Part shown: in pieces, positions 7,501-63,106 of the stretch | How positions within the stretch are numbered: the stretch's first letter is position 1 | Layout of the letters: the number at the start of each line of letters is the position of its first letter | Source of the DNA: Octopus sinensis | Lineage: Eukaryota | Length of the DNA: 64,000 nucleotides | Direction of reading: 5' to 3' | Assembly: GCF_006345805.1 (NCBI RefSeq) | Contig: NC_043026.1 | Coordinates: 9,796,001-9,860,000, forward strand | Translations under genes and position numbers: made by a program | The notes under the pieces: model-generated | Database searches by the model: none | Seen by the model: only the letters and a program-made list of their open reading frames with translations | What the model was told of the DNA's origin: nothing

Positions 7501-7996
7501 AACTCGTATAATTAAACCTAGATAAATATTTATAGAACACACATCATATTTATGGACATAAAAAGACTAACATAAATGTATACATACACTCTCTCTTTCT
7601 CACACACGCACATTTATATTAATCTTCCCTGTGTGAATACAACTGAGAGACTAGATATCCTAGTTGACTGCAGAATGATAGATAAGGCAATTAAAGATAT
7701 AAAGACAAGGAAAGGCCTTTGTCCATCAGAAGTTACCGTGGAGACACTTAGAATATCTGATGGAGTAGGATAGTCCCATATGGTTAATGAAGTTATCCTC
7801 TGTATCACTTCACCTATATTTACCCACCACTGTATCTCAAGGGTACATCCTGACACAAACCCACCACCATCTCTCTCATTCTCCCCATCTGAATCTTTCT
7901 CTTCCTCCTTTTCCAACAGGTATACACTTGAGCCTTTTCTATAGCGAAACACCTGTCTCTATCCCTATTATTCTTTTAATCTGTAAGCTGTTTAAT

Positions 7997-8060
7997 ACTT
8001 ACAGAAACGTCTCATAAAGGGTAGTAAAGTTATAAGTGTATGGATTATATATATATATTA
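7997..8060 (-). other. Orphan copy of the ZNF exon-1/donor block
   Basis: ccctttatgagacgtttct|GTAAGTattaaac (donor 8002-7997) resembles the ZNF exon-1 ends; no ZNF intron homology continues downstream. Confidence 0.5.
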
Positions 8061-8099
8061 CTAGCAGAGCGATTCCCCAATTTTCTGCACATTTTCAAT

Positions 8100-13972: not shown

Positions 13973-14828
13973 CATATGGTCAGAGATTCTAATTCCAGGT
14001 ATGGAAGCAAGGTCTAGAATTGAGGGGCCTTAGAGTTAACCTAGCAAAAATCCAAGTCTTAGAAAGTAGGAAGACAGACAAATAACAAATCCCTTCAGGT
14101 GGATGGTTCTGCTCGATCTGTAGAAATTCCATAAGGTGTAAGCTTTGGACACCAGGAAGCCAGCCATCCACCTGATTGTGCTAGCCAGATTGATTACATT
14201 CTCAACAGACAGCAGGATGCACAGTTGCTCTTAAATACAAAGAGTCTGTGGTGAAGAATGTACACCCAGCATAGACTAGTCATTAGTGATTTTAGACTTC
14301 AGGCGAGAAGGATGCTAAGAAGCAGACCAACCTGGAAAAGAAGGATTTGGAAGCTTCAAAACCTTTCATATGGTCAGAGATTCTAATTCCAGGTATGGAA
14401 GCAAGGTCTAGAATTGAGGGGCCTCGGAGTTAACCTAGCAAAAATCCAAGTCTTAGAAAGTAGGAAGACAGACAAATAACAAATCCCTTCAGGTGGATGG
14501 TCCTGCTCGATCTGTAGAAATTCCATAAGGTGTAAGCTTTGGACACACAAAAGGTGCAGCAATATCCAGAGGAAGGTTAACAAGGAAACTAGCTTTTGTA
14601 TGTGGAAGATGTACAGGTAAAATAAGCAGTGAAAATGTGCAGAAAATTGGGGAATCGCTCTGCTAGTAATATATATAATACATACACTTATAACTTTACT
14701 GCCCTTTATGAGACATTTCTGTAAGTATTAAACAGCTTTACAGATTAAAAGGATAATAGGGATAGAGACAGGTGTTTTGCTATAGAAAAGGCACAAGTGT
14801 ATGCCTGTTGGAAAGGAAGGAAGAGAAA
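13973..14828 (+). repeat. Inverted copy of ~7896-8752 inserted into the ZNF-2 intron
   Basis: Reverse-complement match including the RTE tandem-duplication junction; splits an intronic motif that is intact at 13700-13790. Confidence 0.85.
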
Positions 14829-18359: not shown

Positions 18360-19309
18360 TTTATGAGGGTTCAGCAATTTCTCACTGAACAACCACACAG
18401 ATGATTCGTTTATAGTCATCAAATGTTTATGTAGGCACGAGCTCACTCGCTCCGGCAAATCGACATTACCTGTACAGGTGCGACTGGGTGCCACATGTCA
18501 GATGTCGAAGGGATCGCAGAACAACATGAAATGTTAGTTAGTTAATTTGGCTCAAAAGCAAATAGCAAGGCCATGTAGGGGGACATGGAGTTAAGTACAG
18601 GGTGGTGTTCATGTAAAGAGTTCAGGCCACTTGAGGTCCAGGGAGGCTTTGAACAAAGCGGTCGTCGGCATCTTCACCATCTCGTCTGGCAGCTTGTTCC
18701 ACGGATCCGCAACCCGGACGGAGAAAGCTCCTCTCCTTCGATTGAAATGAAATCGTCGCAGGTAGAGCTTTTTGGAATGACCCCGCAGCCGACGCTCTGG
18801 AGCAGGAGTGAAGAACAGCTCTTTTGAGAGGTTACACTTTCCGCTTATGATGCTGTGGGCGAGAATGAGATCACCACAGCGGTGGCGTTTTTCAAGAGAA
18901 TAAAGGTCGAGCGTCCTCAGCCTTTCTTCATAGGACAAATTTTTGAGACCATGAACCATGCGGGTAGCCAGCTTCTGGACTCTTTCGAGATGCTGTATGT
19001 CTTTGAGGAGATAAGGAGAAGAGGCTTGAATCCCATACTCAAATATGGGTCTCACCAGCGTGATATAGAGTGGTAGGAATATGGCTGCTGTGAGCATTCC
19101 GAATGACCGTCGAATCAAGAACAGAATTCCGCGTGCTTTGTTGGCAGCATGGACGCACTGGGCTGAAGGTGAAAAGGAGGAATCCACCAAGATACCCAGG
19201 TCCTTTGAAGTGCTTTGCTCAAGAACACAACGCAACGCCCTGTCTGGGAATCGAACCCACGGTGTCGCAATCATGAGTGCAACACCTTAACCACTGAGCC
19301 ATGCGCATA
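18360..19309 (-). mobile_element. tRNA-headed SINE (family E-like) split by a CR1 insertion
   Basis: Head tggctcagtgg...gggttcgattccc...cttgagcaaagcacttc at 19309-19207; continues atttcatgttg at 18532. Confidence 0.75.
18533..19206 (-). mobile_element. CR1-clade LINE, 5'-truncated 3' end
   Basis: KDLGILVD...LVRPIFEYG...LERVQKLATRM...YEERL...RGHSKKL...FSVRVADPWNKLP, short 3'UTR and (TAAC)n tail; about 200 codons without a stop. Confidence 0.93.
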
Positions 19310-20943: not shown

Positions 20944-23900
20944 TTATGTATCATAATGAAAGAAAGCAAAAGATTGACGCCCTGGAATAATTCCAAAGAC
21001 CACAAAAGAATCACCTGAAATATCAAAACCAATTACTTTGTATACTTCATTATCATCACAGGTGAGGAGTAAATATTGTTCGATATCTTCAGACGTTTGT
21101 TGTTCCGTATGTCCGGGAATTTGGTAAATATTGTTATATTTATCTGTTATATAAACATGGTCACCGTGTGTGGTTAGATAAGGCCTGTACATATAATAAT
21201 ATAGATCTGTTGGTAGTTTTATACTCCTGACCAAGTGTTCCCTGTACCAACAGACAACATAGTAACCATCCTTCCTCCACCTTTCCTTCTCTATCTTCAT
21301 AACAACAATATCACGATCAGATGTCACTATTATATCCAGCATCTCTATCTCCTCTACCTCCACCCTCTCTCTGACCCCAGAACATACTTCACGATTGTAT
21401 TTACCTGTCCAATAATCGACATCAACAACGTCTACATAGTAGTTATACATCTTACGTTTCGTTCTGTCTTTAATATAATGACCACCACATACGAGTTGCT
21501 TGTCATTATTTCTATAAATCCTATTGTAGTATTTTACTGTACTGATGGTTCCCAAATGAGAGAGATCTCTGTTGAAGAACATTAACTGCTCACCAAAGGA
21601 GAGTATGAAGCAGTCATTTGTCCACCGACATATATCTTGTGGCTGTTGCCTTAACTGTTTATGTTGCAGTATGTCCCCTGTTCTAGTTGTGATTACTGTG
21701 ACAGTGTCTCTAAACACCAACACACTAACATTGCCATCTAACTTAATTAGTTTACTGTTATTGTCTCTCTTATAATCATAATTAACTGGTTCGTCCAATG
21801 TTGGAATTGAAATGGGAACCATTGCTGTCCTATATGGAAGTCTCCTCACTGATATTTCATCAATTCCTGACATACTTTCCGCTACGTAATTACCACATCT
21901 CACCTTTAATCTACCTTTACAAACTATTTCACCTGATTTACCTCTTCTTCCTTCTCCTCCGCTGTCTTTCAGTCTATCAATTAATTCGTTACTGAATATT
22001 TCATTGTTTCTCTGAGATGTAAAGGAAGGGAACTGAAGACCAGAATCAAACTTTAATAACGATATAGATTCTAGAATGCTCACTTGGTCCCCATCAATCT
22101 TTATGCAATGACATTCAATCAATTCATTATGCACACACCAGTAAATGTTTCCCACTTTCCTCCATATCATGCTGTAAGGCACTCCACTTTGCCAGACTTT
22201 ACGCTCCATCAAATCTTGTTGTTTCAACTGAAATATTTCTCGTCTGTTAGGGACTGTGACCATAATATCTCTTTCTCCCGAAAAACACACACCACCCACT
22301 AAAGTTCCAAGGTCTCTGTGACATAGCAGCTCCCCATGGCTATCAAATATTTTAACGTTGCCATTATTCGCTTTTTCACACACAACTGCCTCTCCACCAT
22401 CAGAGATATCAATATCTTTAACTTCAACAGGATACTCGTCTGTTTGTAACCGACAAACAGGAAAGCTTTCCCGATTATTGTTAAACAAGCCTTCAACATA
22501 CAATTTATTACTATGGCTTCCAACAAACCTTGGTCCTTTACAGTTTATGCTAGTGATATCAACTTCATCTATATAAATTCTGTTATTTAAAAATATACTG
22601 TTGTATTCACCATTCTGTGTCAAACACAGAATCTTATTATACCCCATATAGAAACCACCATATCTATCCCACCAGCCATAAATGTACAAATAACTGTCAT
22701 CAATTGTCATATTGTTGTAATCTTTAATGTACTCCATGTAGTGTCTAACCGAATGTAAACAGTGACCATTACGGTTGAAGAAAATGATGAATTTATCGTT
22801 GTAAACAATGATGATATCATTGGCAGTAACTGCAATATCACCGATGTCAAAAATATAATTACAGTCACCATGTCTGTCTCTTGTTAATAATGTTTCAATT
22901 ATGTCAATTTGTTTTACTTCCTTCACGGTTGAATGCCTTTCATCAATATCAACAACATACAGAGTACGTCCGTCTCTCCATCTGCTACACACCAGTAGAT
23001 TGTCCGACAAAGGAGCTATACATTTATATTCATTTATCGTCTGGTATGTTATCAATGACAATGGAAATTCCACTTTCAGTGTCAGCAGTTTGAGATTATC
23101 GTAAGTCGTAATAACCAGTGTGTTCGATTGCCATCGGGACATATTGACATAGTAGCCATTCAATTCGACAGAGTCCAGAAGTTGGCCATCAAATGTTAAT
23201 ATCTTAATGTTTTTATTGTTCCTGTCATATCCTGCAATCAGGTTATTTTCAGTAATAACCAAACGATCAATGCCTACTGGTTGTTCGTCTTCAAAATCTG
23301 GAAGGACAACGAGATCCCGCTGAGCTTTATCAGAAACTGTTAGATCTTGTAGATATATTCTAGAAGACAACATCTCAGCAACACAGATATTTCTAGAGAG
23401 TACATCTACAAGGTCGATGTACATGTTAAGTTGATTATTTGTAACGTGATCTCTGACCACCAAGTTATTGTCATTTATAGCAAACATACGGCTGCTGTCT
23501 ACCAGATAAACGAACATTTCATCACTACATCCACCACAAAGATTGAGTAGAGGTTTGGTGTTGGACAGTAAAACAGCAGGCACCATCTTGCTGCTGCTGC
23601 TGCTACTACTACTACTCCAACTATTACGTCGACAGCTATCAGCAACACCATCACTACCACTACAACCATGACCACCATCACCACCTATTCCAGTGTTGTA
23701 CAGAAATACTTTTTTCCTAGTGACAATTAGTAGCATTAGTGTTTCGTTTTCTATCGTTAAAGATTTTACTACAGAATGGATACCAACCCTATAAATTATT
23801 TCAGTTTGATTATAATTTTTAATGGCTAAAATATCTAAATGAGATGGTTTATCACAATAACAGACAATTTGGTCTTCACCCAACTTACACACCCGTACAT

Positions 23901-24090
23901 AAGGCTGTCTTAATAGTACAGTTCTAACTGTCTTTGAGAGATTTCCGATGACCCTTAATTGTTTCTGTAGGGGTAATGTGACCCCTATTCCAAAACAATC
24001 CCATCGACATATATCTGTAGCTGTAGACGGCAGAGGCAATGTGGACACAATGTCCCCTTCATTAGAAATGTACAACAAGCAATCATGCTT
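20944..24090 (-). CDS. C-terminal part (1048 aa) of a large multi-beta-propeller (NHL/TolB-like) protein
   Basis: 3.1-kb open frame in AT-rich DNA; blade motifs TDICRW..GVTLP, NIKILTFDGQLL, VKIFDSHGELL..VTVP, QPQDICRW; the frame is open upstream of the tracked start as KHDCLLYISNEG. Confidence 0.8.
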   Translation of the reverse strand, partial: KHDCLLYISNEGDIVSTLPLPSTATDICRWDCFGIGVTLPLQKQLRVIGNLSKTVRTVLLRQPYVRVCKLGEDQIVCYCDKPSHLDILAIKNYNQTEIIYRVGIHSVVKSLTIENETLMLLIVTRKKVFLYNTGIGGDGGHGCSGSDGVADSCRRNSWSSSSSSSSSKMVPAVLLSNTKPLLNLCGGCSDEMFVYLVDSSRMFAINDNNLVVRDHVTNNQLNMYIDLVDVLSRNICVAEMLSSRIYLQDLTVSDKAQRDLVVLPDFEDEQPVGIDRLVITENNLIAGYDRNNKNIKILTFDGQLLDSVELNGYYVNMSRWQSNTLVITTYDNLKLLTLKVEFPLSLITYQTINEYKCIAPLSDNLLVCSRWRDGRTLYVVDIDERHSTVKEVKQIDIIETLLTRDRHGDCNYIFDIGDIAVTANDIIIVYNDKFIIFFNRNGHCLHSVRHYMEYIKDYNNMTIDDSYLYIYGWWDRYGGFYMGYNKILCLTQNGEYNSIFLNNRIYIDEVDITSINCKGPRFVGSHSNKLYVEGLFNNNRESFPVCRLQTDEYPVEVKDIDISDGGEAVVCEKANNGNVKIFDSHGELLCHRDLGTLVGGVCFSGERDIMVTVPNRREIFQLKQQDLMERKVWQSGVPYSMIWRKVGNIYWCVHNELIECHCIKIDGDQVSILESISLLKFDSGLQFPSFTSQRNNEIFSNELIDRLKDSGGEGRRGKSGEIVCKGRLKVRCGNYVAESMSGIDEISVRRLPYRTAMVPISIPTLDEPVNYDYKRDNNSKLIKLDGNVSVLVFRDTVTVITTRTGDILQHKQLRQQPQDICRWTNDCFILSFGEQLMFFNRDLSHLGTISTVKYYNRIYRNNDKQLVCGGHYIKDRTKRKMYNYYVDVVDVDYWTGKYNREVCSGVRERVEVEEIEMLDIIVTSDRDIVVMKIEKERWRKDGYYVVCWYREHLVRSIKLPTDLYYYMYRPYLTTHGDHVYITDKYNNIYQIPGHTEQQTSEDIEQYLLLTCDDNEVYKVIGFDISGDSFVVFGIIPGRQSFAFFHYDT

Positions 24091-26279
24091 GTGTCGGACA
24101 CCACTAACTGTCCATTTGGCAGATTACATATTTTACCAATGAGGATTTTGTCATATTCATTTCCTTTTAGTCGTATATTTACATTTCTGATATAAGGATT
24201 CTTGATGGGTAAACAACAGCCAGACCAGTCATGATACCTGTAAAGAAGAACCCTGTGGAATTCAATGTCCAACACATAAATAGTTCCTTGGAAAACAGCA
24301 ATGTGAGAGTGAACAGTCAAAGGTAGTTTCCACTGCCATTTAATGTCTCCATATATATTGTAACATTTCACAACAGACTCTCTCTTGAACAGAACATAAT
24401 AATATACATTATCAGAGTAGATGTGATGAAGACAGCCATAGAACTGAAGGTATTTTTCAAAAAGTGCTTCACCTGATGTGGAATAAAATACCAGTTTATG
24501 TTTCTTTACGTCTACAATTACGAAATTAATTGGAGTTGCAGCAATGGTAACAGCATCATGTTCCAGTGAAATTCTGATTTTGATGTCAACCCTGTCCTCC
24601 TTAATCAACTGAATATGTACCTCTGTTTTGTTTTCATCAGTAATCAGAGCTAAATACTTATTTGACACAATATGACATATTTTAATGTAATCAGTGTGAA
24701 CCTGTATTAAAGGACCCTTGTTTAGTTCAGGACATGTGATATACTGAAGTCTTTTGATTTCACGATAAAAGACCAGAAATCTGTCTGAGTTCATTCTACA
24801 AAAGACTGAAGGAAAGAAGGGGAAATTTAAATAATTTGGGCCAATTTTTCCCCCCGTATCAGTGAATAATATAGCTTTGTTATTCCTGTAGGTAATTAAT
24901 ATAGAAGATGTTGACATAGGTAGAATATTTGTAATATTGCAGGGATCTTCAATATAAATATGGTTGTTTAACTTGGGGGTGTGCAACTGGCGGCTGTATG
25001 ACAGTTTGGGCCAAAAGTCTTTATTTGTTTTAACCACACGAAGAATACCAAAATAATCTGTTAAGAAAATGGCACCTGTGCCAACAGAAATATTCCTACA
25101 TTTCGTGCCTATTTCCCTCTGTGAAACACCACCTGTACCTGAAATCTTATAAATTATATGTCCCTGGAGGACATAAAAATGGTTTTGGTACACAGTGACA
25201 TTGGTTGGGAGATCCAGAGAATGAGTGTAGACCTCAAATATCTGCTGGCCATCCAAATTATAGCATACAACTCTATTAATATTAGCAAATGATATTAATA
25301 GTTGATACTGTACCCCTACAGTAATATCTGCAGGTATCTCTTTGACATCAAATTTATTTGTAATTACATTATCATCCCAATCAACAAGGTATATGGTCTT
25401 CATAAACATTTCCACACCTATGAACGTAGAATGTTGTAAATATGACACCATCATAAAACCTAATTGAAGAGTTTTAATTTTAAAACTCGAGGGATTGATA
25501 ATAAGAATAATTTTTCTAAAGGGTAGGGTGGCCAGAACAGTGTCTTCACTAATTCTGGTTAAATCAGTGACAGAAGATGGGCAACGAACATCATTTCTGC
25601 CACCATCTCTTGTTACATAACATATTGTCATATAATGGCGGGAATATGTTACAATTCCCCCTTGTATGATAATAATATTGGATGTTATGTTGCTTAAGTC
25701 TTCACCAGATTCGTCGATCTTTGCTTCTCTGCTTACAACCGGAGAAAGAGGTCGAAATTTGTTGATTATTTTTGGTGCCTCAGTGGTCTTGTATTTGTCT
25801 TGTAAAACATTTGTATTTATGTAGTGTTCAAGAAACAATTCGAGTTTTCCAAAATTAACAAAATCTTGACTGTAATCGTATTTGTTAATGTCTTTTAACA
25901 AAATATTTGTTCTTTGTGCAAAACACCGAATAAAGACATTTTCGTCCAATCCTACACTTTTTAAAAAGTTACATATCTTTTCCCGAGAATTTATCAACAT
26001 ATTCATTTTGTCTTCATATGCGTTGAATCTTGTATAATATATGTTTGTGTCCAAAACATCTCGTCTTTCAATTATTTCCCGCTTTTTAGGGTCTTCTTTG
26101 TGTCTTTTTTGTCTTTTTGTTGATTGACATGAAGGTCGTTTTTTTGGCATTTCTGTTCTCGAACATTCACCTGCATCATACCTACACTTTTTATTGTAGA
26201 CTCCATCGCTTTTTGTTGTTGTTACAGCTCTTTTCCGAGGTGTAAGTTTACTTGAAACATTTCTTGTATGATCTTCCAT
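23985..26279 (-). CDS. N-terminal part of the same protein: basic NLS-rich head, helical segment, two propeller modules; natural junction at about aa 730 (VSDT)
   Basis: 764-codon ORF; RVVCYNLDGQ, KLVFYSTSGE, VKCYNIYGDI, LPNGQLVVSD blade motifs; candidate acceptor ttcattatAG (26288-26287) 7 nt before the ATG. Confidence 0.8.
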   Translation of the reverse strand: MEDHTRNVSSKLTPRKRAVTTTKSDGVYNKKCRYDAGECSRTEMPKKRPSCQSTKRQKRHKEDPKKREIIERRDVLDTNIYYTRFNAYEDKMNMLINSREKICNFLKSVGLDENVFIRCFAQRTNILLKDINKYDYSQDFVNFGKLELFLEHYINTNVLQDKYKTTEAPKIINKFRPLSPVVSREAKIDESGEDLSNITSNIIIIQGGIVTYSRHYMTICYVTRDGGRNDVRCPSSVTDLTRISEDTVLATLPFRKIILIINPSSFKIKTLQLGFMMVSYLQHSTFIGVEMFMKTIYLVDWDDNVITNKFDVKEIPADITVGVQYQLLISFANINRVVCYNLDGQQIFEVYTHSLDLPTNVTVYQNHFYVLQGHIIYKISGTGGVSQREIGTKCRNISVGTGAIFLTDYFGILRVVKTNKDFWPKLSYSRQLHTPKLNNHIYIEDPCNITNILPMSTSSILITYRNNKAILFTDTGGKIGPNYLNFPFFPSVFCRMNSDRFLVFYREIKRLQYITCPELNKGPLIQVHTDYIKICHIVSNKYLALITDENKTEVHIQLIKEDRVDIKIRISLEHDAVTIAATPINFVIVDVKKHKLVFYSTSGEALFEKYLQFYGCLHHIYSDNVYYYVLFKRESVVKCYNIYGDIKWQWKLPLTVHSHIAVFQGTIYVLDIEFHRVLLYRYHDWSGCCLPIKNPYIRNVNIRLKGNEYDKILIGKICNLPNGQLVVSDTSMIACCTFLMKGTLCPHCLCRLQLQIYVDGIVLE

Positions 26280-43134: not shown

Positions 43135-43660
43135 ATTCAGTAGTTTTATTTTTATAGCGTGCTTTCACTTCACTACCGAGCGCAGCTCTGTGTGCCTTGG
43201 GTATGTGCTGTGATTTGTTGTGATACTCTGATGGTTATTGTATGGAAAGTGTTCTGCGTAGGATGTGTGCAGTGCCTAGTAGTGCAATTTTCTGTATGTT
43301 ATATGTGTTTGTAAGTCCTGGTGTTTTTTTTATGTATTTGTCTGAATATTTTTTTATCATGCCTAATGCACCTACTATGATAGGAATTGTTTCTGTTTTC
43401 AGGTTCCACATTCTAGTTACCTCTATTTCCAGGTCTTTGTATTTTGAGAGTTTCTCCATTTCTTTTAGAGACACGTTGTCATCAGCCGGTATTGATACAT
43501 CAATTAGAAAGCATTTTTTTTCTTCATGATCTCTGACAACTATATCTGGTCTGTTGGCCTTAATTTCTCTGTCTGTGTGTATCGGCATATCCCAGAGTAT
43601 GGTTGCTTTCTCGTTTTCTGTGACCTTTTCTGGTGTGTGCCTATACCATCTTTTTTCTGT
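43135..43660 (-). mobile_element. R4/Dong-like retrotransposon 3' end (restriction-like endonuclease)
   Basis: WYRHTPEKVTENEKATILWDMPIHTDREIKANRPDIVV...IDVSIP...KYKDL...GTAHILRRTL; (AAT)n on both sides. Confidence 0.9.
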
Positions 43661-49018: not shown

Positions 49019-50515
49019 ATGGAAAAGAGTGAGAAAATTATAGACCTGACTTCCCCTGAACACATGATAAAAGAGAGGAGATCGTATGACTGTGATATCT
49101 GTACAAAGTCCTTCCTTCGCAAAAGTGGCCTAATTGTGCACAAACGTATTCATGCAGGGGAGAAATCATATCATTGTGATATCTGTGGTAAATCGTTCTC
49201 TAGTAGTAATTTAACTGCACACAAACGTACCCATACAGAAAAGAAACTACATCATTGTGATATTTGTAGTAAATCATTCTCTAACAGTAGTCACTTAACT
49301 GCACATAAACGTGTTCATACAGGAGAGAAGCCATATCATTGTGATATTTGTGGTAAATCATTCTCTATAAGTAGTCATGTTACTGCTCACAAACGTACTC
49401 ATACAGGGGAGAAACCATATCACTGTGATGTCTGTGGTAAATCATTCTCTGGAAACACTGCCCTAACAAAACACAATCGTATTCATACAGGAGAGAGACC
49501 ATTTCACTGTGATGTCTGTGATAAATCATTCTCTCAAAGTATTCACTTAACTACACATAAACGTATTCACACAGGGGAGAAACCGTATCATTGTGATATT
49601 TGTGGTAAATCATTCATTGCAAATAATTACTTAACTAGGCACCAACGTATTCACACAGGAGAGAAACCATATGACTGTGATATCTGTGGTAAATCATTCT
49701 CTTATAGTTCTGGCTTAACTAAACACAAAAGTATTCATACAGGGGAGAAGCTATATCACTGTGATGTCTGTGGTAGATCATTCTCTCAAAGATCTCACTT
49801 AACTAGACACAAACATATTCACACGGGAGAGAAGCCATATCATTGTGATATCTGTGGAAAATCATTCACTGAAAATAGTTACTTAGTTATACACAAACGT
49901 GTTCATACTGGAGAGAGACCATATCACTGTGATATCTGTGGTAAATCTTTCTCTGAAAATTCTGCCTTAACTAATCACAAACGTATTCATACGGGAGAAG
50001 AACCTTATCATTGTGATATCTGTGGGAAATCATTCTCTCGAAGTAGTAACATAGCTAGACACAAACGTATTCATACAGGAGACAGGCCATATGAATGTGA
50101 TTACTGTGGTAGATCATTCAATGAAAATCGTGATTTAACTAGACACAAACATATTCATTCGAGAGAGAACTCATATAACTGTGATGTCTGTGGTAAATCA
50201 TTCTGTAACCGTAATGCCTTGACTTCACACAAGCGTGCTCATGCAAAGGAAATGCCATATCCCTGTGATATCTGTAGTAAATCATTTTTTGAAAGGGGTC
50301 ACTTAATTGCACACAAGCGTGTTCATACAGGAGAGAAGCCAAATTGTGATATCTGTGGTAAATCATTGACTCATAATTATCAGTTAAGTAGACACAGACG
50401 TATTCATACAGGAGAGAAACCATATCACTGTGATGTCTGTGGTAAATCATTCTCTCAAAATAGTGACTTAATGAAACACAAATATATTCATACAGAAGAG
50501 AAAGGAGAAGGATAG
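49019..50515 (+). CDS. C2H2 zinc-finger protein (ZNF-3), 498 aa, 17 fingers
   Basis: Tandem C2H2 fingers with TGEKP linkers; shared N-terminal peptide. Confidence 0.95.
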
Positions 50516-50540: not shown

Positions 50541-51404
50541 CAAGGTATCGAAAAGTAACTAAACACATTCTGTAGGACAAGCTCATTGTAGTTCAGGCTT
50601 CGGCCACTAGAAGCCACTTCGTGCGACCCTCAGGCACCAGCCTACCAACTGGCATCATCTGGTCATGTCATATTGCTGCATGCTGCGTCCTTTGTCGTGC
50701 TTCTCCCCATGAATCGAATTTTGCAATGGCTGAAATGAAGGAACAGTATGCTTCCATGAAATTCTGTTTTCTGCTGGAGAGAACAGTGGCCAAAACATGT
50801 CATGCTGCAAAGAGGTTACAAGGAAGCTGCCATGAGCAAAACACAAGTTTATGAATGGTTTTCACGCTTTAGGAATGGTCACTTGTCACTTGAAGACCAG
50901 CCTCGTTCAGGGTAACTGTCAACCTCCTGAACAAATGAAAATTCATGGACTAAACTTGGAGGATCGTCACCGAACAATTGACGAGCTTGTTGATCTAACT
51001 GGTGTATCCTGGAGCTCCTGCCAAAGAATTTTGAGTGAGGAATTGCGAATGAAAAGAGTTGCAGCAAAATTTGTGCCTCGCTTGCTCACGGAAGATCAAA
51101 AGCAGTCACGACTGAATGCATGTCATGGACTGTCAGAACAGCTGGAAGTCAGGTTAGGCCTTTTTCCAAAGGTCATCACTGGTGACGAAAGCTGGTGCTA
51201 CGAATGTGGGGTGAGGAAAAAACAATGGAGGCATTAAAAAGTATCACTTTACAAGAATTCCTGCTCTGCTTCATTTAGTGGAAAAAGTGCCTGGACGAAT
51301 GCATTGCTTCTAATGAAGAATACTTTGAAGGCAATGAAAGTGTAAACATGTAACGCTAATTGAATAAAATTACAAAATTCTGGTTTCTTTTGAGTACTTC
51401 ATCT
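50541..51404 (+). mobile_element. Internally deleted mariner element
   Basis: EQYASMKFCFLL...VYEWFSRF...RILSEELRMKRVAAKFVPRLLTEDQK...VITGDESWCY, jumps to C-terminal CIASNEEYFEG; degenerate TIRs. Confidence 0.88.
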
Positions 51405-53803: not shown

Positions 53804-53923
53804 TTAAAGTTTAGCACCATACCGTGGTGCCACACCAGCTCCTCTGATCATAGCCACAACATCTTTTGCACAACCGACGAAAGTTGTCAGACCACAGCCA
53901 CCATGACCATAGTTGTTAATGAC
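53804..53923 (-). CDS. DAO/DDO: D-amino-acid/D-aspartate oxidase family gene, last coding exon
   Basis: ttctctccatttAG|VINNYGHGGCGLTTFVGCAKDVVAMIRGAGVAPRYGAKL*; NYGHGG FAD-site motif and C-terminal PTS1-type AKL. Confidence 0.93.
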   Translation of the reverse strand, partial: VINNYGHGGCGLTTFVGCAKDVVAMIRGAGVAPRYGAKL

Positions 53924-56016: not shown

Positions 56017-56054
<38 letters not shown>

Positions 56055-56225
56055 GTAGTAGTAGTAGTAGTAGTGATTTATTGATTTGTTATTGATGGAG
56101 ATGTTCCTAATATAGTCTTCTTTGTGGCTGTCTTCTAGATAAAGCTGGTTATGAAATAGGGATTCAGTGAAGGAATAGAAGTGAGAGTAAAAGAAAGAGG
56201 CAGTAGTAGAGATAGGAGAACTCAC

Positions 56226-56324
56226 CTGTATAGTCCGACCATTAAATGTGACAGTTTCCTGGTCCAGACGGGTTTCTTTCCTAAATGGTCTCAGTCCAAC
56301 TCTTGTCTCCAAAATTTCCACATT
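56226..56324 (-). CDS. DAO/DDO: DAO/DDO-family gene, penultimate exon (99 bp)
   Basis: ctctcAG|NVEILETRVGLRPFRKETRLDQETVTFNGRTIQ|GTGAGT; GLRP motif. Confidence 0.92.
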
Positions 56325-56514
56325 CTGAGAGACAGAAAAAAAAAAGTGATTTACGACAATACAATCTTTGCTATCAAATATTTTTATAGGTTAATAACGA
56401 GTAACAGAATTAGGTGTGGAGAAGATAGATTGTTGACCATTCTAATGCTCTACACTCAAGACTACGATACTCTACCATGGTTCCTGCGGAATCCGCTTTG
56501 TTGCCAAGGTTTAG

Positions 56515-56740
56515 GCAGTGAGCTGGCAGAATCGTTAACACGCCGGGCAAAATAGTTTTATTTCGTCTGCTGTTACATTCTGAGTTCAAATTCCGCCGAG
56601 GTCGACTTTATCTTTCATCCTTCCGAGGTCGATAAATTAAGTACCAGTTACGCACTGGGGTCGATGTAATCGACTTAATCCTTTGTCTGTCCTTGTTTGT
56701 CCCCTCTGTGTTTAGACCCTTTGTGGGCAATAACGAAATA
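56515..56740 (+). mobile_element. SINE family B
   Basis: Family match. Confidence 0.85.
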
Positions 56741-57404
56741 AGGTTTATGTTGAGTCTGGGATAATTGGCTCTCTTCCATCCACCAAACTCAGAGGATAAG
56801 GAACAATCATTGTTTTTTTTTTCCCTCTTTCTCTTCCTGCACATCATCACCCATGTATGAATGCTATGGTCAAATCCCATGTCATGTAACAGAAACTGTC
56901 TCAAGTATTCTGACCAAGCAAATACTATTATCAGACATTTTATGAGCGGAATATTTACTGCAGCCGATCTTTTATACCAAGACAAAACAATGTACATAGT
57001 TTCTTACAAACTACCATTCCTCATCTTTGTATTTTTAAAATGTAGAGTTCACAATGTGAAAGGATTGTCTGCTGTTGGACAATTAATTAGTTTCTGAGTT
57101 AGGGACGAAGAGCTCAATCGGAAGTGTTAGAAATCACTTCTGCTTGTGGCACAAATCTATGGCACACAAATCTATGGCACACAAACCTACTTTTTTTTAA
57201 TCAAAATTTTTTTTTTCACACAGATACATAGTGCTGGTGCCACATGAAAAGCACTCTTCACACTCTGTAAAGTGGTTGGCATTTAGGAATGGTATCTAAC
57301 TGTAGAATCCATGCCAAAGTAGACACTGATAGTATTACACAGAACTCTGGTTCATTGGATCCTTTCAAACCATCCAAACAAAGCTAGCATGGAAAACGGA
57401 CATT

Positions 57405-57566
57405 ATATGATGATGGTGGTGGTGGTGGTGGTGGTGGTGGTGGTGATGGTGATGATGATGATGATGATGCAGATGATGATGATGATGATGATGCTGATGC
57501 TGCTGCTGCTGCTGATGATGATGATTATGATGACGATGGTGATGATGATGATGATGATGACGATGG

Positions 57567-57598
<32 letters not shown>

Positions 57599-57640
57599 GT
57601 GACGATGATGATGGTGATGATGATGATGATGATGATGGTG
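57405..57640. repeat. (ATG/GTG)n trinucleotide tract (expanded family C tail)
   Basis: Follows catggaaaacggacatt. Confidence 0.9.
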
Positions 57641-57734
57641 GCCATTATTAGTTTCCTAGGGTTTCAGTGATTCAAAAGGTTGCGAGTTTTGAATAGATTG
57701 AAGCATGAAAATGGAGAAAAGAGCCTAAATTTAC

Positions 57735-57852
57735 CTTCAAACTTGGCACAACTTGAGCACAGCTGTCCAATATGTGTCTTTGGTCTTCTTCATTCGGAGT
57801 AGTGTCCCAGTTGCCTTCTTGTGACGTTCCTCCCAAAACAACATAGTTCTTC
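57735..57852 (-). CDS. DAO/DDO: DAO/DDO-family exon (118 bp, phase 2 to 0)
   Basis: aaAG|G KNYVVLGGTSQEGNWDTTPNEEDQRHILDSCAQVVPSLK|GTAAAT. Confidence 0.9.
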
Positions 57853-57856
57853 CTTT

Positions 57857-57933
57857 GTATATACATTATATATATATATATATATACATTATATATATAT
57901 ATACATTATATATATATATATACATTATATATA

Positions 57934-57979
<46 letters not shown>

Positions 57980-58013
57980 TATATATATATACATACATAC
58001 ATTATATATATAC

Positions 58014-58097
<84 letters not shown>
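57857..58097. repeat. (TA)n-rich microsatellite abutting the exon acceptor
   Basis: Direct inspection. Confidence 0.95.
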
Positions 58098-58099
<2 letters not shown>

Positions 58100-58383
58100 A
58101 AATGAGAAAATGGAGAAACATACCTAAATCAATCATCAACCATCAGATAATACCCAATCAATACTTTATTGAACCATTACACAACAGCAATGACATTATA
58201 CATAATATATTACAAATATAACTAGACATAGAAATAGAAATAGAAAATACAATTACATTGTAGCTGACAGCTGTTTCAACCGTGAAGACAGGTATGTCCC
58301 ATTTAACCTATTAGCCATATAAAGCAGGTATAAATGGGACATTAACAAGAATGTCTCATGGCCTCTCACGGCCTTTAATGTAA

Positions 58384-58435
<52 letters not shown>

Positions 58436-58905
58436 ACAGCAAAAATTTAAATTCAAATGAATATGGTACTTAATTTAGATGCAACAGAATTTTGTATGGT
58501 GTTATCCATATAAATCCATGGGGTGATTATAATCAAAATAAGCAACAAGAATAACTCCGGTAATATGCATATATATATAACGGGCTTCTTTCAGTTTCCA
58601 TCTACCGAATCCACTCACAAGGCTGTAGAAGACACTTGCCTAAGGTGCCACACAGTAGGACTGAACCAGGAACCATGTGGTTGGTAAGCAAGGTACTTAG
58701 CACACAGCCACTCCCACATCTATGTGTAAATTCTTTAAATTCTTCCAGTAAAAAGGGGTTGTGTTATGACTTAGAAACAAAACTCAATTACTGGAAGTTA
58801 GATGCAACAATAATATTGAGTTATAAGATGCAAATTAGAGAATAGTTATTCTCATGGTGAGAGTCACAACATCCCCTGTGAAAATAGACTTGACCAAATA
58901 GGCGC

Positions 58906-59310
58906 AGGAGTGGCTGTGTGGTAAGTAGCTTGCTAACCAACCACATGGTTCCGGGTTCAGTCCCACTGCGTGGCATCTTGGGCAAGTGTCTTCTGCTATA
59001 GCCCCGGGTCGACCAATGCCTTGTGAGTGGATTTGGTAGACGGAAACTGAAAGAAGCCTGTCGTATATATGTATATATATATATAAGTGTGTGTGTATAT
59101 GTTTGTGTGTCTGTGTTTGTCCCCCTAGCATTGTTTGACAACCGATGCTGGTGTGTTTACGTCCCCGTCACTTAGTGGTTCGGCAAAAGAGACCGATAGA
59201 ATAAGTACTGGGCTTACAAAGAATAAGTCCCGGGGTCGATTTGCTCGACTAAAGGCGGTGCTCCAGCATGGCCGCAGTCATATGACTGAAACAAGCAAAA
59301 GAGTAAAAGA
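58906..59310 (+). mobile_element. SINE family A
   Basis: Family match. Confidence 0.9.
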
Positions 59311-59646
59311 AATGACTATAAATGGTAACAGTCTGAGTGAGAGACTAACAGAGTAGGGGTTAATCGCAGGAAGTTATAAGGGGTCCTTTTGGTAGTTTGT
59401 CAGAATATCGTTTGCTGGTTTGTGTATAGTTCGTGGAGAATTTGTTGGATTGCTATGTTATTGCTTCATTATATGTTATTGTTACGGCACAAGTATTGTC
59501 ATTAATAGTGACAATACTTACATAATTAACGAAGAATTACTATGTTACAATATTTATCCATTTTCATAGCTATGCTTACACATGAACATGCAGAGGTGGT
59601 CATTTTCTTTACCTGAAAACTCTAAATTTTCCAGGCTTTTATTTAA

Positions 59647-59865
59647 CCCTTTAGTGTTCAGATTATTCTATCAAACATAATGCTTATTGATTCCCATTGA
59701 TTTGAATTAATCATGCATTATCTCATGTCTTCAAGATCTTGATGGTGTAATTACTTAATGTCGAATAACATTGTAGGGTAGGTGTGAGAGCCTGGATCTG
59801 GTCAGTTTGAACATAAAACAGATTAGCTATTTTGACCGGATATGGCCGGTTTAAATACTAAAGGG
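59647..59865. mobile_element. piggyBac-like MITE (opposite orientation to the 48630 copy)
   Basis: TTAA|CCCTTTAGT...ACTAAAGGG|TTAA. Confidence 0.9.
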
Positions 59866-59899
59866 TTAAACACATGTGTGATCGTTACCAACATCGAGC

Positions 59900-60700
59900 A
59901 TGATCGTTACCAACGTTGCTTCACTGGCACGTGTAAAAAGATTCAAGCGAAGTCGTTGCCAGTACCGCCTGACTGGCACCTGCGCCGATGGCACGTAAAA
60001 AGCACCCACTACACTCTCGGAAGGGCATCCAGCTGTACAAACTCTGCCAGGTCAAGGCTGGAGCCTGGTGCAGCCATCTGGTTCACCAGCCCTCAGTCAA
60101 AATCGTCCAACCCATGCCAGCATGGGCCAGTCAGGCAGTACTGGCATTGGCCACACTCAAATGGTGCTTTTTATGTGCCACCTGCACAGGAGCCAATTCA
60201 GCAGCACTGGCAACGATCTCATTCGGATGTTTTTTCATGTGCCAGTAAGGCAACATAGGTAACGATCACGCTTGAATGGTGCTTTTCTACATGCCATCAG
60301 CATGGAGGCCAGCTTGTTGCTCTGGCAACGATCACGCTTGAATGGTGCTTTTCTACATGCCATCAGCATGGAGGCCAGCTTGTTGCTCTGGCAACGATCA
60401 CGCTTGAATGGTGCTTTTCTACATGCCATCAGCATGGAGGCCAGCTTGTTGCTCTGGCAACGATCACGCTTGAATGGTGCTTTTCTACATGCCATCAGCA
60501 TGGAGGCCAGCTTGTTGCTCTGGCAACGATCATGCTCGGATGGTATTCTTAGTGCTCTACTAGCATGGATGCCAGTCATCAAATTTGATTTCGATTTCGA
60601 TTTCACTTGCCTCAACAGGTCTTCGCAAGCAGAGTTTAGTGTCCAATGAGGGAAAGGTACGCATGAAGTGGGCTGGTTACACCCCTGGCATGGACCATAA
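59900..60700. mobile_element. Two family C pieces, one with a 66-bp x4 VNTR (60261-60524)
   Basis: aacgatcacgcttgaatggtgcttttctacatgcc recurs at 60261, 60327, 60393 and 60459. Confidence 0.8.
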
Positions 60701-60792
60701 AACCAAAGGCAGTCATGGGTAGTCCAGAATCAAAACGGTTAATAGATGTTCAAATATGGTCCCTTTGATTTTGAAAGAAATAGGCCCATCTG

Positions 60793-61330
60793 CTGAGACC
60801 ATTTAGGGAAGAAACCCGTCTAACGATTCTGCCAGCTCGCTGCCTAAACCTTGGCAACAAAGCGGATTCCGCAGGAACCATGGTAGAGTATCATAGTCTT
60901 GAGAGTAGAGCATTAGAATGGTCAACAATCTATCTTCTCCACACCTAATTCCATTACTCGTTATTAACCTATAAAAATATTTGATAGCAAAGATTGTATT
61001 TTCGTAAATCATTTTTTTTTTCTCTGTCTCTCAGAATGTGGAAATTTTGGAGACAAAAGTTGGACTGAGACCATTTAGGGACCAGGAAACTGTCACATTT
61101 AATGGTCGGACTATACAGGAAACTGTCACATTTAATGGTCGGACTATACAGGTGAGTTCCCCTATCTCTACTACTGCCTCTTTCTTTTACTCTCACTCCT
61201 ATTCCTTCACTGAATCCCTATTTCATAACCAGCTTTATCTAGAAGACAGCCACAAAGAAGACTATATTAGGAACATCTCCATCAATAACAAATCAATAAA
61301 TCACTACTACTACTACTAATAATAATAATA
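60793..61330 (+). pseudogene. Inverted, rearranged duplicate of the DAO penultimate exon with flanking intron (pseudo-exon 61035-61151)
   Basis: Reverse-complement match to ~56030-56536; 15-bp deletion, 33-bp tandem duplication, both splice sites retained. Confidence 0.92.
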
Positions 61331-61418
61331 ATGTTGCTTTATAATTATACTTAAATGTATAAAGAGAGAGAGAGAGAAAAGAAAAGAATAAGAGAAAAAA
61401 TATAACAAATTAACTTAC

Positions 61419-61489
61419 GAAGGAAAAATATATACTGGTTTATCTACCCCAGAAGCGACGTAGAAGTGTTTTATCCATGGTGCATTTAC
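61419..61489 (-). CDS. DAO/DDO: DAO/DDO-family exon (71 bp, phase 0 to 2)
   Basis: tttacAG|VNAPWIKHFYVASGVDKPVYIFP-TC|GTAAGT; TC plus the next exon's G gives Ser, so phases agree. Confidence 0.9.
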
Positions 61490-61956
61490 CTGTAAATAAT
61501 AATAATAACAACAACAACAATGACGACAACGATGACAATGATAATAATAATAATGGGTTTGCTTCCTAGCTACACGGTTTCGGGTTCAGTCCCACTGCGC
61601 GGCACTTTGGGTAGGTGTCTTCCACTATAGCCCCGAGCCGACAGGAGCTTTGTGATTGAATTCGGTAGGTGGAAGTTACTGCCGTGTGTGTATGTGTGCG
61701 TATAGCTGCTCAGTGCCTCTCCGAAAGAGAGAGAGGGTTTCAGATTTTGCCACAAGGGCAGCAATTTTGCGGGGAGGGGATAAGTCGATTACAATGACCC
61801 CCAGTGTTTAACTGGTACTTATTTTATTGAGCCCCTAAAGCATGAAAGGTAAAGTCAAAGGTGGAATTTGAACTCAGAATGTGGCGACGGATGAAATACC
61901 ACTAAACATTTTGTCTGGCGCATTAATGATTCTGCCAGTTCACCACCTTCATAATG

Positions 61957-61989
<33 letters not shown>

Positions 61990-61991
<2 letters not shown>

Positions 61992-62195
61992 CTTGACCAG
62001 CAGAATGTCATAAAAGAATTAGACCCGGTGGAGAGCTACAAGTACCTAGGGGTAATTGAAGGGAACGGAATAAGGCATTCAGTGATGAAGGAAAGTATCA
62101 GGAGAGAATGTTGTCGAAGAGTAAGAGCAATACTCAAGACAGAGCTGAATGCAAGAAACAGGATCGAAGCGATCAATGCTTTAGCCATACCAGTT
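61990..62195 (+). mobile_element. R4/Dong-like RT fragment
   Basis: IKELDPVESYKYLGV...RRVRAILKTELNARNRIEAINALAIPV, preceded by (AAT)n. Confidence 0.8.
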
Positions 62196-62346
62196 GAGGT
62201 CGACTTTGCCTTTCATCCTTTCGGGGTCAATAAATTAAGTACCAGTTACGCACTGGAGTCGATGTAATCGACTTAATTCCCTTGTCTGTCCTTGTTTGTC
62301 CCCTCTATGTTTAGCCCCTTGTGGGCAATAAAGAAACACATATATG

Positions 62347-63004: not shown

Positions 63005-63106
63005 CCTAATGACTTGACCTCGAATCGGAGTCATCTGTCGATCATTAATCAAATGGTAATTCCCCAGACCACAGCAGTTAACTACGATATCAAAGTCAGC
63101 CATCAC
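63005..63106 (-). CDS. DAO/DDO: DAO/DDO-family exon (102 bp), most upstream exon in the window
   Basis: ttctttcAG|VMADFDIVVNCCGLGNYHLINDRQMTPIRGQVIR|GTAAAT; VVNC.GLG and P.RGQ motifs. Confidence 0.92.

What the first reader, a model, noticed from the sequence alone, without database searches (positions are those of the whole stretch)
56030..61330. Intronic antisense copy of a DAO exon with both splice sites: a built-in ~500-bp pre-mRNA duplex
Seen: 60822-61330 is a high-identity inverted copy of ~56030-56536 (exon 56226-56324 plus flanking intron). It lies about 90 nt downstream of the 61418 donor in the same pre-mRNA and would loop out about 4.3 kb containing the 118-bp exon. Established: exon-complementary intronic sequences direct ADAR recoding, and inverted repeats alter splicing and circRNA formation; coleoids recode extensively. 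Inference: a gene-specific editing or splicing switch created by duplication.
Basis: partly seen in the sequence, partly recalled or inferred. Interest (0 to 1): 0.7.

Follow-up and report, generated by a model that had tools for sequence, protein, structure and literature searches.

The report
Inverted exon copy inside octopus gene
An octopus D-amino-acid/D-aspartate-oxidase gene carries, in one of its introns, a young backwards copy of one of its own exons that could fold the unspliced RNA into a ~480-bp double strand; the same layout causes exon skipping in two human disease genes, but nothing here shows it is a regulated switch.

Summary
Window 60821-61332 is an inverted copy of 56045-56537: 97-98% identical in ungapped blocks, 93% with indels. 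The source holds the 99-bp penultimate exon of a minus-strand DAO/DDO-family gene, both its splice sites, and 213 and 181 nt of flanking intron. The copy starts 86 nt downstream of the 61418 donor. Pairing would close a 4,283-nt loop holding the 118-nt exon.

New here: the orthologous Octopus vulgaris locus has a clean empty site and one copy of the exon, so the copy is a lineage-specific insertion. The arms differ by 2.6%, against 16-17% to O. vulgaris, and each arm has its own derived substitutions. That makes it real and young, not an assembly artefact. The copy is a patchwork (extra 29-bp exon fragment, 15-bp deletion, 33-bp tandem duplication, 1-5-nt microhomologies), which fits replication template switching.

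The predicted duplex is very stable (-858 kcal/mol). No RNA data could be reached, so editing and splicing effects are inferred. Human CHM and MANBA inverted exon duplications cause exon skipping. The 4.3-kb spacing argues for a weak editing effect. Verdict: a real, unusual, probably non-adaptive structural variant of a known kind; the "switch" reading is unsupported.

The parts
56045..56537 (-). Source arm: last 213 nt of intron B/C (56325-56537), exon C (56226-56324) and first 181 nt of intron C/D (56045-56225)
   Evidence: Its 56511-56537 end lies 26-27 bp inside a SINE. Its other end lies in an (AGT)n(ATT)n microsatellite.
56226..56324 (-). Exon C, 99 bp, phase 0-0. It encodes NVEILETRVGLRPFRKETRLDQETVTFNGRTIQ, including the GLRP arginine that aligns with the substrate-carboxylate-binding Arg of DAAO/DDO.
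   Evidence: Same length as O. vulgaris exon L004:15862-15960.
60821..61332 (+). Inverted copy. It is exon-sense on the + strand and therefore antisense in the minus-strand pre-mRNA. It lies in intron A/B.
   Evidence: Absent from the O. vulgaris orthologous intron.
61035..61151 (+). Copy of exon C, 117 bp (99 - 15 + 33), flanked by copies of the acceptor and donor sequences
61083..61148 (+). Perfect 33-bp tandem duplication inside the exon copy, with 4-nt junction microhomology (CAGG)
   Evidence: (family D18)
60793..60821 (+). Extra 29-bp exon-C fragment (= reverse complement of 56266-56294, 28/29). It contains the 15 bp missing from the main copy. Its first 5 nt (CTGAG) are shared with the ancestral intron, as junction microhomology.
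56538..60820 (-). 4,283-nt loop between the arms. It contains exon B, SINE copies, a 66-bp minisatellite (60192-60587), and (ATG)n and (TA)n microsatellites.
57735..57852 (-). Exon B, 118 bp (not a multiple of 3). It has a weak acceptor (43% pyrimidines at -25..-3, preceded by (TA)n) and a good donor (AAG|gtaaat).
   Evidence: The acceptor is equally AT-rich in O. vulgaris.
61419..61489 (-). Exon A, 71 bp (VNAPWIKHF...). Its donor GT is at 61418-61417, 86 nt upstream of the copy.
63005..63106 (-). Exon Z, 102 bp (VMADFDIVVNCCGLGN...RGQVIR)
53804..53923 (-). Last coding exon (VINNYGHGG...), ending in AKL-stop, a peroxisomal PTS1-like tail
56511..56741 (.). SINE that supplies the last 26-27 bp of the source arm. 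It is absent at this site in O. vulgaris, so it was inserted before the duplication.
   Evidence: (D11, D15-17)

Best explanation
This is a real, lineage-specific, evolutionarily young intragenic inverted duplication in a DAO/DDO-family (PF01266) gene of an octopod.

Origin. About 0.5 kb (exon C with both splice sites and flanking intron) was copied in reverse orientation. It was inserted 86 nt into the intron two exons upstream, replacing ~19 nt of that intron. The most likely cause is a replication accident with serial template switching (FoSTeS/MMBIR-like).

RNA consequence. In the primary transcript the copy is antisense to exon C. If intron A/B is still present when exon C is transcribed, the two arms can zip into a ~480-bp dsRNA. 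That duplex buries the acceptor, the donor and most of exon C, and loops out 4.3 kb containing the weak-acceptor exon B.

Expected consequences, in decreasing order of likelihood (all inferred):
(i) ADAR hyper-editing of both arms in a minority of transcripts.
(ii) Partial skipping of exon C (in frame, removing the substrate-binding GLRP arginine), or of exon B or exons B+C (frameshift).
(iii) Some back-splicing of exon B.

Overall it is a tolerated by-product that at most lowers functional output. It is not an evolved switch.

Shown: the structure, its derived status, its age relative to the split from O. vulgaris, and its pairing potential. Inferred: the mutational mechanism and every RNA-level consequence.
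For: Structure.

Gene identity: Pfam PF01266, E 2.3e-23. Best PDB match is human D-aspartate oxidase 6rkf at 2e-37, then DAAO at 5e-34.

Empty site. The orthologous, colinear O. vulgaris locus is L004. It reads ...AATTATAAAATAATATAGAGTTCACCTG-CTCAG-CAGATGAGC... The window reads ...AATTATAAAGCAAC-[copy]-CTCAG-CAGATGGGC.... Exon C is single-copy in the 29.5-kb L004.

Real divergence. The arms differ at 11/429 sites (2.6%), against 16-17% to O. vulgaris. Clean substitutions are mostly transitions. Derived changes are present in both arms: six in the source in the polarised table, plus two more inferred from the 29-bp fragment and a SINE relative, and three in the copy.

Patchwork with short microhomologies: 5 nt CTGAG, 1 nt, about 2 nt and 4 nt CAGG.

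Pairing. Cofold of the arms gives -857.8 kcal/mol, against -135.4 and -99.7 for each arm alone. In the MFE of the 5,551-nt pre-mRNA segment there are 477 arm-arm pairs. Of exon C, 85/99 nt are paired, as are 20/20 acceptor and 10/10 donor positions.

Precedents. A 1,752-bp inverted duplication of CHM exon 12 gives a predicted hairpin and observed exon skipping, with microhomology attributed to FoSTeS/MMBIR (PMC8756506). A MANBA inverted duplication gives exon skipping (PMC6549551). Loop-out skipping is favoured for exons with a weak 3' and a strong 5' splice site (PMC13019027). Exon B is of that type.

Background. Metazoan A-to-I editing mainly targets dsRNA formed by young repeats (PMC9989829).
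Against: - No RNA evidence of any kind was obtainable, so every effect on editing or splicing is a prediction.
- In human data, editing of inverted Alu pairs decays as exp(-d/800 bp) and is weaker when the partners are in different gene segments (PMC4066801). At 4,283 nt that rule predicts almost no editing.
- Removing intron A/B before exon C is transcribed would abolish cis pairing.
- Persistence for ~15% of the time since the O. vulgaris split means the variant is not strongly deleterious. That fits either rare duplex formation or a weakly constrained gene (dN/dS 0.65 against O. vulgaris).
- Junction microhomologies of 1-5 nt are compatible with end-joining as well as template switching.
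- Only one outgroup was available, and fixation in the species is unknown.
Confidence: 0.6

Rival explanations
1. Evolved cis-regulatory element. The antisense exon copy is maintained by selection. It acts as an editing-site complementary sequence that directs ADAR recoding of exon C. Alternatively, it acts as a structure-dependent (for example temperature-dependent) switch for inclusion of exons B and C.
For: - The duplex potential is very high and covers the exon and both splice sites.
- 28 of the exon's 34 adenosines lie in the paired part, and 24 of the 34 would recode if edited.
- Coleoids edit heavily.
- 6 of the 8 transition differences give G.U wobbles rather than mismatches in the transcript (derived; not significant).
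- Both indels in the exon copy are multiples of 3 (chance about 1/9).
Against: - Absent from the O. vulgaris orthologue.
- Young, with neutral-looking divergence in both arms.
- The two large indels interrupt the duplex exactly within the exon.
- The 4.3-kb spacing and the location in different introns are unfavourable.
- Squid ADAR2 edits some mature, intron-free messages, and known ECS elements are short and conserved.
- Long, nearly perfect inverted duplicates are generally selected against, even in pre-mRNA (PMC7006430).
- No DAO/DDO entry was found in the editing supplements that could be searched. That search is weak evidence, because it covered other species and only partial files.
Confidence: 0.1
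2. Functionally inert relic. The duplication is real, but the duplex essentially never forms in vivo because intron A/B is spliced out and degraded, or coated by proteins, before exon C emerges. There would then be no measurable RNA phenotype.
For: - The distance rule for inverted repeats, exp(-4283/800), gives about 0.005.
- The arms lie in different introns.
- The variant has persisted, and the gene's exons and splice sites are intact.
Against: - The arms are longer and far better matched than typical Alu pairs.
- Exon B's weak acceptor should slow removal of intron A/B (inference).
- The CHM and MANBA cases show that such hairpins do act in vivo.
Confidence: 0.18
3. Hairpin-RNA (endo-siRNA) source. 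Dicer processes the intronic hairpin into small RNAs antisense to exon C, and these silence the DAO mRNA in trans. This would be analogous to Drosophila hpRNA loci, which derive from inverted duplications of their target genes.
For: A long, near-perfect hairpin that contains sequence of its own target. hpRNA precedent: PMC10317233 (abstract only).
Against: The 4.3-kb loop is unlike compact hpRNA loci. No small-RNA data are available. The endo-siRNA pathway in cephalopod somatic tissue was not examined here.
Confidence: 0.06
4. Assembly artefact: a chimeric or misjoined read placed a second, inverted exon-C segment in the intron.
For: One arm end lies in a SINE and the other in a microsatellite. 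The reads themselves cannot be inspected.
Against: - 2.6% divergence, dominated by transitions, with derived changes in both arms relative to O. vulgaris.
- The SINE homology stops after 26-27 bp and joins unique sequence, rather than continuing through the repeat.
- A clean empty site with 5-nt microhomology in the orthologue.
- A 512-bp insert needs two independent misjoins.
Confidence: 0.04

Closest known systems
Human CHM (choroideremia) intragenic inverted duplication of exon 12 (PMC8756506)
   Same: An exon plus flanking intron is duplicated in inverted orientation into a neighbouring intron of the same gene. There is microhomology at the breakpoints, attributed to FoSTeS/MMBIR. The predicted pre-mRNA hairpin includes the wild-type exon and its splice sites.
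   Different: - The CHM copy is 1,752 bp, lies downstream of the exon and close to it, and is a recent pathogenic allele with documented exon skipping.
- The octopus copy is 0.5 kb, lies upstream and 4.3 kb away, is internally rearranged, and is old enough to have diverged 2.6%.
- The octopus copy has no RNA phenotype measured.
Human MANBA 13.1-kb intragenic inverted duplication (PMC6549551)
   Same: Inverted intragenic duplication with microhomology. A short stretch of the target site is lost at the insertion point (67 nt there, ~19 nt here). Exon skipping is attributed to a pre-mRNA hairpin.
   Different: The MANBA duplication is much larger, spans several exons, was mediated by Alu elements and causes disease.
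Inverted-repeat (IRAlu-type) pairs flanking exons: loop-out exon skipping and circRNA formation (PMC13019027; mouse Sry from memory)
   Same: The 201-nt pair 60821-61021 / 56337-56537 lies in the two introns that flank exon B. Exon B has a weak 3' and a strong 5' splice site, the class reported as most prone to loop-out skipping.
   Different: The repeat is not a transposon pair. It is a copy of gene sequence, and one arm runs on through a coding exon.
ADAR editing-site complementary sequences (GluA2 Q/R and R/G, Drosophila Syt1 and others; PMC5705066, PMC3479170)
   Same: Intronic sequence complementary to an exon within the same pre-mRNA.
   Different: Known ECS duplexes are short and imperfect, conserved across species, and direct site-selective editing. 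This one is ~480 bp and near-perfect (a hyper-editing type of substrate), lineage-specific and unconserved.
Drosophila hpRNA loci (PMC10317233)
   Same: A hairpin born from inverted duplication of part of a protein-coding gene.
   Different: hpRNAs are separate transcription units with short loops and demonstrated siRNAs. This element sits inside an intron of its own parent gene, and no small-RNA evidence exists.

Membership tests
DAO/DDO-family FAD oxidase gene (host gene) | Match to Pfam PF01266 and to solved DAAO/DDO structures over the C-terminal half, including the GLRP arginine and the YGHGG motif | tested here: met
   PF01266 E 2.3e-23. 6rkf (human DDO) 2e-37 and DAAO 5e-34. Motifs seen. 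Whether the substrate is D-Asp or neutral D-amino acids is unresolved.
Intragenic inverted exon duplication forming a pre-mRNA hairpin (CHM/MANBA type) | A second, inverted copy of an exon plus flanking intron lies within the same transcription unit | tested here: met
Intragenic inverted exon duplication forming a pre-mRNA hairpin (CHM/MANBA type) | Derived insertion: an allele or orthologue without the copy exists | tested here: met
   Empty site in O. vulgaris L004, about 4727-4747, and single-copy exon C in the 29.5-kb locus
Intragenic inverted exon duplication forming a pre-mRNA hairpin (CHM/MANBA type) | [quoted passage not shown] | not testable with these tools
   No transcript data for this species could be reached.
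FoSTeS/MMBIR-type complex rearrangement | Several templated segments taken from nearby sequence, including inverted ones, joined at short microhomologies | tested here: met
   Four joins: 5 nt (CTGAG), 1 nt, about 2 nt and 4 nt (CAGG). The 29-bp fragment, the 15-bp deletion and the 33-bp duplication are all drawn from the same 0.5 kb. Compatible with this mechanism but not unique to it.
ADAR editing-site complementary sequence (ECS) | Intronic sequence complementary to the exon in the same pre-mRNA | tested here: met
ADAR editing-site complementary sequence (ECS) | Conservation of the complementary element across species | tested here: not met
   Absent in O. vulgaris
ADAR editing-site complementary sequence (ECS) | A-to-I editing observed at exon sites that depend on the element | not testable with these tools
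   No RNA reads available. The searchable editing supplements contain no DAO/DDO entry.
Inverted repeats flanking an exon (circRNA / loop-out skipping) | Reverse-complementary sequences in both flanking introns of the exon | tested here: met
   60821-61021 (intron A/B) and 56337-56537 (intron B/C) flank exon B (pair I2).
Inverted repeats flanking an exon (circRNA / loop-out skipping) | Back-splice or skipping junction reads | not testable with these tools
   No RNA data
hpRNA / endo-siRNA locus | 20-23-nt small RNAs phased along the hairpin arms | not testable with these tools
   No small-RNA data

The most novel reading that the evidence does not exclude
The inverted exon copy is fixed in this octopod and has been co-opted as a long-range, duplex-stability-dependent (for example temperature-dependent) element. 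When the 480-bp helix forms, ADAR hyper-edits the substrate-binding segment of the oxidase, or exons B and C are skipped. This would tune D-amino-acid/D-aspartate oxidase output in an ectotherm that uses D-aspartate as a neuroactive compound. It would be an editing or splicing regulator born in one step by exon duplication, rather than by gradual evolution of an ECS.
Probability: 0.08. Interest if true: 0.7.

Novelty: new member of a known kind. Interest (0 to 1): 0.35.

Why it matters
Inverted intragenic exon duplications are known almost only as rare human disease alleles. Long, nearly perfect inverted duplicates are depleted from metazoan pre-mRNAs. Here one has survived long enough in a wild-type octopod genome to diverge 2.6%, in a clade with exceptionally active ADARs.

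It is therefore a natural experiment, with a ready-made 'empty' control in O. vulgaris. It could show how far apart the two arms of a dsRNA can lie and still be edited or disturb splicing. It could also show whether a one-step duplication can seed an editing-complementary sequence.

If RNA data show nothing, it is simply a well-documented neutral structural variant.

Tried and rejected
- Exact-product look-ups of window ORFs, to find other assemblies of the locus: P0001, two ORFs spanning the arms, a ZNF ORF and a transposase-like ORF. All came back empty.
- A metagenome scan with an 18-nt exon-C pattern gave three hits. All were chance matches with no DAO coding context.
- TE-mediated capture of the fragment. 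TE homology near the copy ends at about 60555, and 60556-60792 is unique in the window. There is no target-site duplication and no poly(A). RT template switching onto the pre-mRNA is not formally excluded.
- My first reading of 56405/56406 as independent CpG decay in both arms was wrong. The O. vulgaris outgroup shows that both changes are in the source arm.
- My first estimate of 'CTG' microhomology at the left junction was replaced by 5 nt (CTGAG/CTCAG) once the ancestral intron sequence was available.
- Tests for selection on pairing were not significant: 6 wobble against 2 mismatch transitions, and 8 derived changes in the source against 3 in the copy.
- A search for DAO/DDO editing sites in the supplements of PMC8382921 and PMC9989829 found nothing. 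Liscovitch-Brauer 2017 is not held.
- A + strand gene using the exon copy: no other DAO exon exists on the + strand of the window.

Full report
**Observation.** The inverted repeat is real.
- The repeat finder reports three collinear inverted blocks: 56045-56261/61116-61332 (217 nt, 98%), 56280-56345/61014-61079 (66 nt, 97%) and 56337-56537/60821-61021 (201 nt, 97%).
- blastn joins them into one alignment, 60821-61332 vs 56537-56045, 93% over 512 columns, E = 0.
- Self-BLAST finds 209 inverted pairs at E < 1e-20 in the window. The 40 longest I examined are C2H2 zinc-finger gene arrays and one 859-bp repeat pair. A search of the copy region against the window finds no other copy of the DAO exon.

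**Host gene.** The gene runs on the minus strand.
- Exons read from the sequence are Z 63106-63005 (102 bp), A 61489-61419 (71 bp, donor GT at 61418-61417), B 57852-57735 (118 bp), C 56324-56226 (99 bp, phase 0-0) and the last exon 53923-53804, ending AKL-stop.
- The 169-residue product matches Pfam PF01266 (E 2.3e-23).
- In the PDB it matches human D-aspartate oxidase 6rkf (2e-37) slightly better than D-amino-acid oxidases (5e-34). It is a DAO/DDO-family gene whose substrate class I leave open.
- Exon C encodes the GLRP arginine. This aligns with the substrate-carboxylate-binding Arg of DAAO/DDO (alignment; the residue's role is from memory).

**Anatomy of the copy.**
- The source arm consists of 213 nt of intron B/C, exon C and 181 nt of intron C/D.
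- One end of the arm lies 26-27 bp inside a SINE (56511-56741). The other end lies in an (AGT)n(ATT)n microsatellite.
- The copy is exon-sense on the + strand, so it is antisense in the pre-mRNA. It starts 86 nt after the exon-A donor and leaves a 4,283-nt loop (56538-60820) that contains exon B.
- The copy is not a plain duplicate. Its exon (61035-61151) lacks 15 bp and has a perfect 33-bp tandem duplication.
- A separate 29-bp exon fragment (60793-60821) contains the missing 15 bp and abuts the far end of the copy.

**Cross-species test.**
- The 90% cluster of the O. bimaculoides fragment P0001 also holds O. vulgaris CAI9728950.1 (P0039).
- The locus encoding P0039 was retrieved as L004 (OX597823.1:36,004,594-36,034,049).
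- L004 is colinear with the window through exons and unique intron stretches, and exon lengths are identical. I therefore treat it as the orthologue.
- Window 61530-61338 aligns to L004 4539-4727. Window 60797-60691 aligns to L004 4747-4853. The ~540 bp that hold the copy correspond to only ~20 bp in O. vulgaris.
- At nucleotide level, O. vulgaris reads ...AATTATAAAATAATATAGAGTTCACCTG-CTCAG-CAGATGAGC... The window reads ...AATTATAAAGCAAC-[copy]-CTCAG-CAGATGGGC....
- Both window arms hit the same single O. vulgaris segment, L004 15690-16123. That segment has no second copy anywhere in the 29.5-kb locus.
- The SINE at 56511-56741 is also absent at this site in O. vulgaris.
- The order of events in the window's lineage is therefore SINE insertion, then inverted duplication.

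**Age and authenticity.**
- In the three-way alignment the arms differ at 11 of 429 sites (2.6%). Each arm differs from O. vulgaris at 16-17% of sites.
- Assuming equal rates and no gene conversion, the duplication happened in roughly the last 15% of the time since the split.
- Clean differences are mostly transitions (8:2).
- Polarised with the outgroup, both arms carry derived changes. The source arm is derived at 56465, 56406, 56405, 56337, 56302 and 56179, and also at 56279 and 56519 as judged from the 29-bp fragment and a SINE relative. The copy is derived at 60904, 61001 and 61160.
- Independent substitutions in both arms, plus an empty site in a relative, argue strongly against an assembly artefact.
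- Two of the source-arm changes are nonsynonymous changes in the working exon (K to R at 56302, E to K at 56279).
- dN/dS against O. vulgaris over 169 codons is 0.65 (dS 0.156). The gene is intact but evolves fast.

**Origin.**
- Junction microhomologies are 5 nt (CTGAG, shared between the ancestral intron and the exon), 1 nt, about 2 nt at the 15-bp deletion and 4 nt (CAGG) at the 33-bp duplication. About 19 nt of ancestral intron were lost at the target.
- The result is a nearby, inverted, multi-segment templated patchwork. This is what replication-based template switching (FoSTeS/MMBIR) produces, and it is the mechanism proposed for the two human precedents. This step is inference.
- TE-mediated capture finds no support. 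TE homology ends at about 60555, and there is no target-site duplication or poly(A).

**What it can do.**
- The two arms cofold at -857.8 kcal/mol, against -135.4 and -99.7 when folded alone.
- In the MFE structure of the 5,551-nt pre-mRNA segment there are 477 arm-arm pairs. 85 of 99 exon-C nucleotides are paired, as are all 20 acceptor-proximal and all 10 donor-proximal positions.
- Exon C has 34 adenosines. 28 are in paired positions, and 24 would recode if edited.
- Exon B, inside the loop, has a weak acceptor (43% pyrimidines, after a (TA)n tract) and a good donor. This is the class reported as most prone to loop-out skipping between inverted Alu pairs (PMC13019027).
- Skipping exon C would remove 33 residues in frame, including the GLRP arginine. 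Skipping exon B, or B+C, shifts the frame.

**What argues for a small effect.**
- In human data, editing of inverted Alu pairs decays exponentially with a ~800-bp length scale and is weaker when the partners sit in different gene segments (PMC4066801). Here the gap is 4,283 nt and the arms lie in different introns.
- Squid ADAR2 edits some mature, intron-free messages (PMC7192619). Neural recoding in squid concentrates in coding sequence, whereas ubiquitous editing hits intronic and UTR repeats (PMC9068888).
- Long (>300 bp), nearly perfect (>96%) inverted duplicates are depleted even from pre-mRNAs across Metazoa (PMC7006430). Such structures are usually a liability, not a tool.
- The variant has nevertheless persisted, so it cannot be strongly harmful.

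**Comparison with known systems.**
- The closest match is the human CHM allele. It has a 1,752-bp inverted duplication of exon 12 with flanks in the adjacent intron, microhomology at both breakpoints, a predicted hairpin with the wild-type exon and observed exon-12 skipping (PMC8756506). The MANBA case is similar on a larger scale (PMC6549551).
- The octopus element shares the architecture and the probable origin. It differs in being upstream, 4.3 kb away, internally rearranged and evolutionarily retained.
- It fails the conservation criterion of a classical ECS (absent in O. vulgaris).
- It meets the structural criterion of an inverted-repeat-flanked exon, for exon B.
- Its status as an hpRNA source is untestable here.

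**Verdict.** The 'editing or splicing switch' part has no support and some evidence against it, but it is untested because no RNA data were reachable. I rate it a new member of a known kind and of moderate interest. Its main value is as a natural experiment with a built-in empty-site control.

Noticed in passing
window 20944-24078 and 23985-26279 (minus strand): Two very long adjacent ORFs (1,044 and 764 aa) overlap by ~94 nt. Neither has a Pfam match at E <= 0.01. They may be an orphan single-exon gene with a frameshift, or a TE-borne protein.
   Followed up: partly
window 7896-8752 and 13974-14828: A second long inverted repeat (859 bp, 95.6% identical, 5.2 kb apart) brackets the C2H2 zinc-finger ORF at 10473-11723. 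Its nature was not determined (TE pair or another inverted duplication).
   Followed up: no
window 1992-3329 (-), 10473-11723 (-), 49019-50515 (+): Three single-exon C2H2 zinc-finger ORFs (416-498 aa, up to 17 fingers) are ~76% identical to one another at DNA level. This is the kind of ZNF cluster known from octopus genomes.
   Followed up: partly
window 57853-58100: The acceptor of exon B is immediately preceded by a long (TA)n-rich microsatellite, so the polypyrimidine tract is poor (43% Y). The O. vulgaris orthologue is equally AT-rich there, so the weak acceptor is ancestral.
   Followed up: yes
L004 1-7287 and 10001-19456 (O. vulgaris OX597823.1): The O. vulgaris annotation splits this DAO-family gene into two models (227 aa and 106 aa). 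The second starts at an internal Met in exon B, and the break falls exactly at the exon A/exon B intron with the weak acceptor.
   Followed up: no
window 56302 and 56279 (exon C): Since the duplication the working exon has gained two nonsynonymous changes (K to R, E to K) and no synonymous ones. The copy and the 29-bp fragment keep the O. vulgaris / O. bimaculoides states. dN/dS against O. vulgaris is 0.65 over 169 codons.
   Followed up: partly
window 6444-7515 and 60192-60587: The same 66-bp minisatellite, attached to a SINE-like unit, occurs at two places in the window. One of them is inside the loop between the arms.
   Followed up: partly
window 61035-61151: Both indels in the exon copy (-15 and +33 bp) are multiples of three, so the copy still reads as an open 39-codon exon on the + strand. 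No other DAO exon exists on that strand. This is probably coincidence (about 1/9).
   Followed up: partly
window 61881-62267 (+), 18609-19274 (-), 43235-43588 (-), 50851-51237 (+): ORFs that look by eye like fragments of reverse transcriptase or transposase (for example a YLG motif at 61881-62267, inside intron Z/A). None reached Pfam significance.
   Followed up: partly
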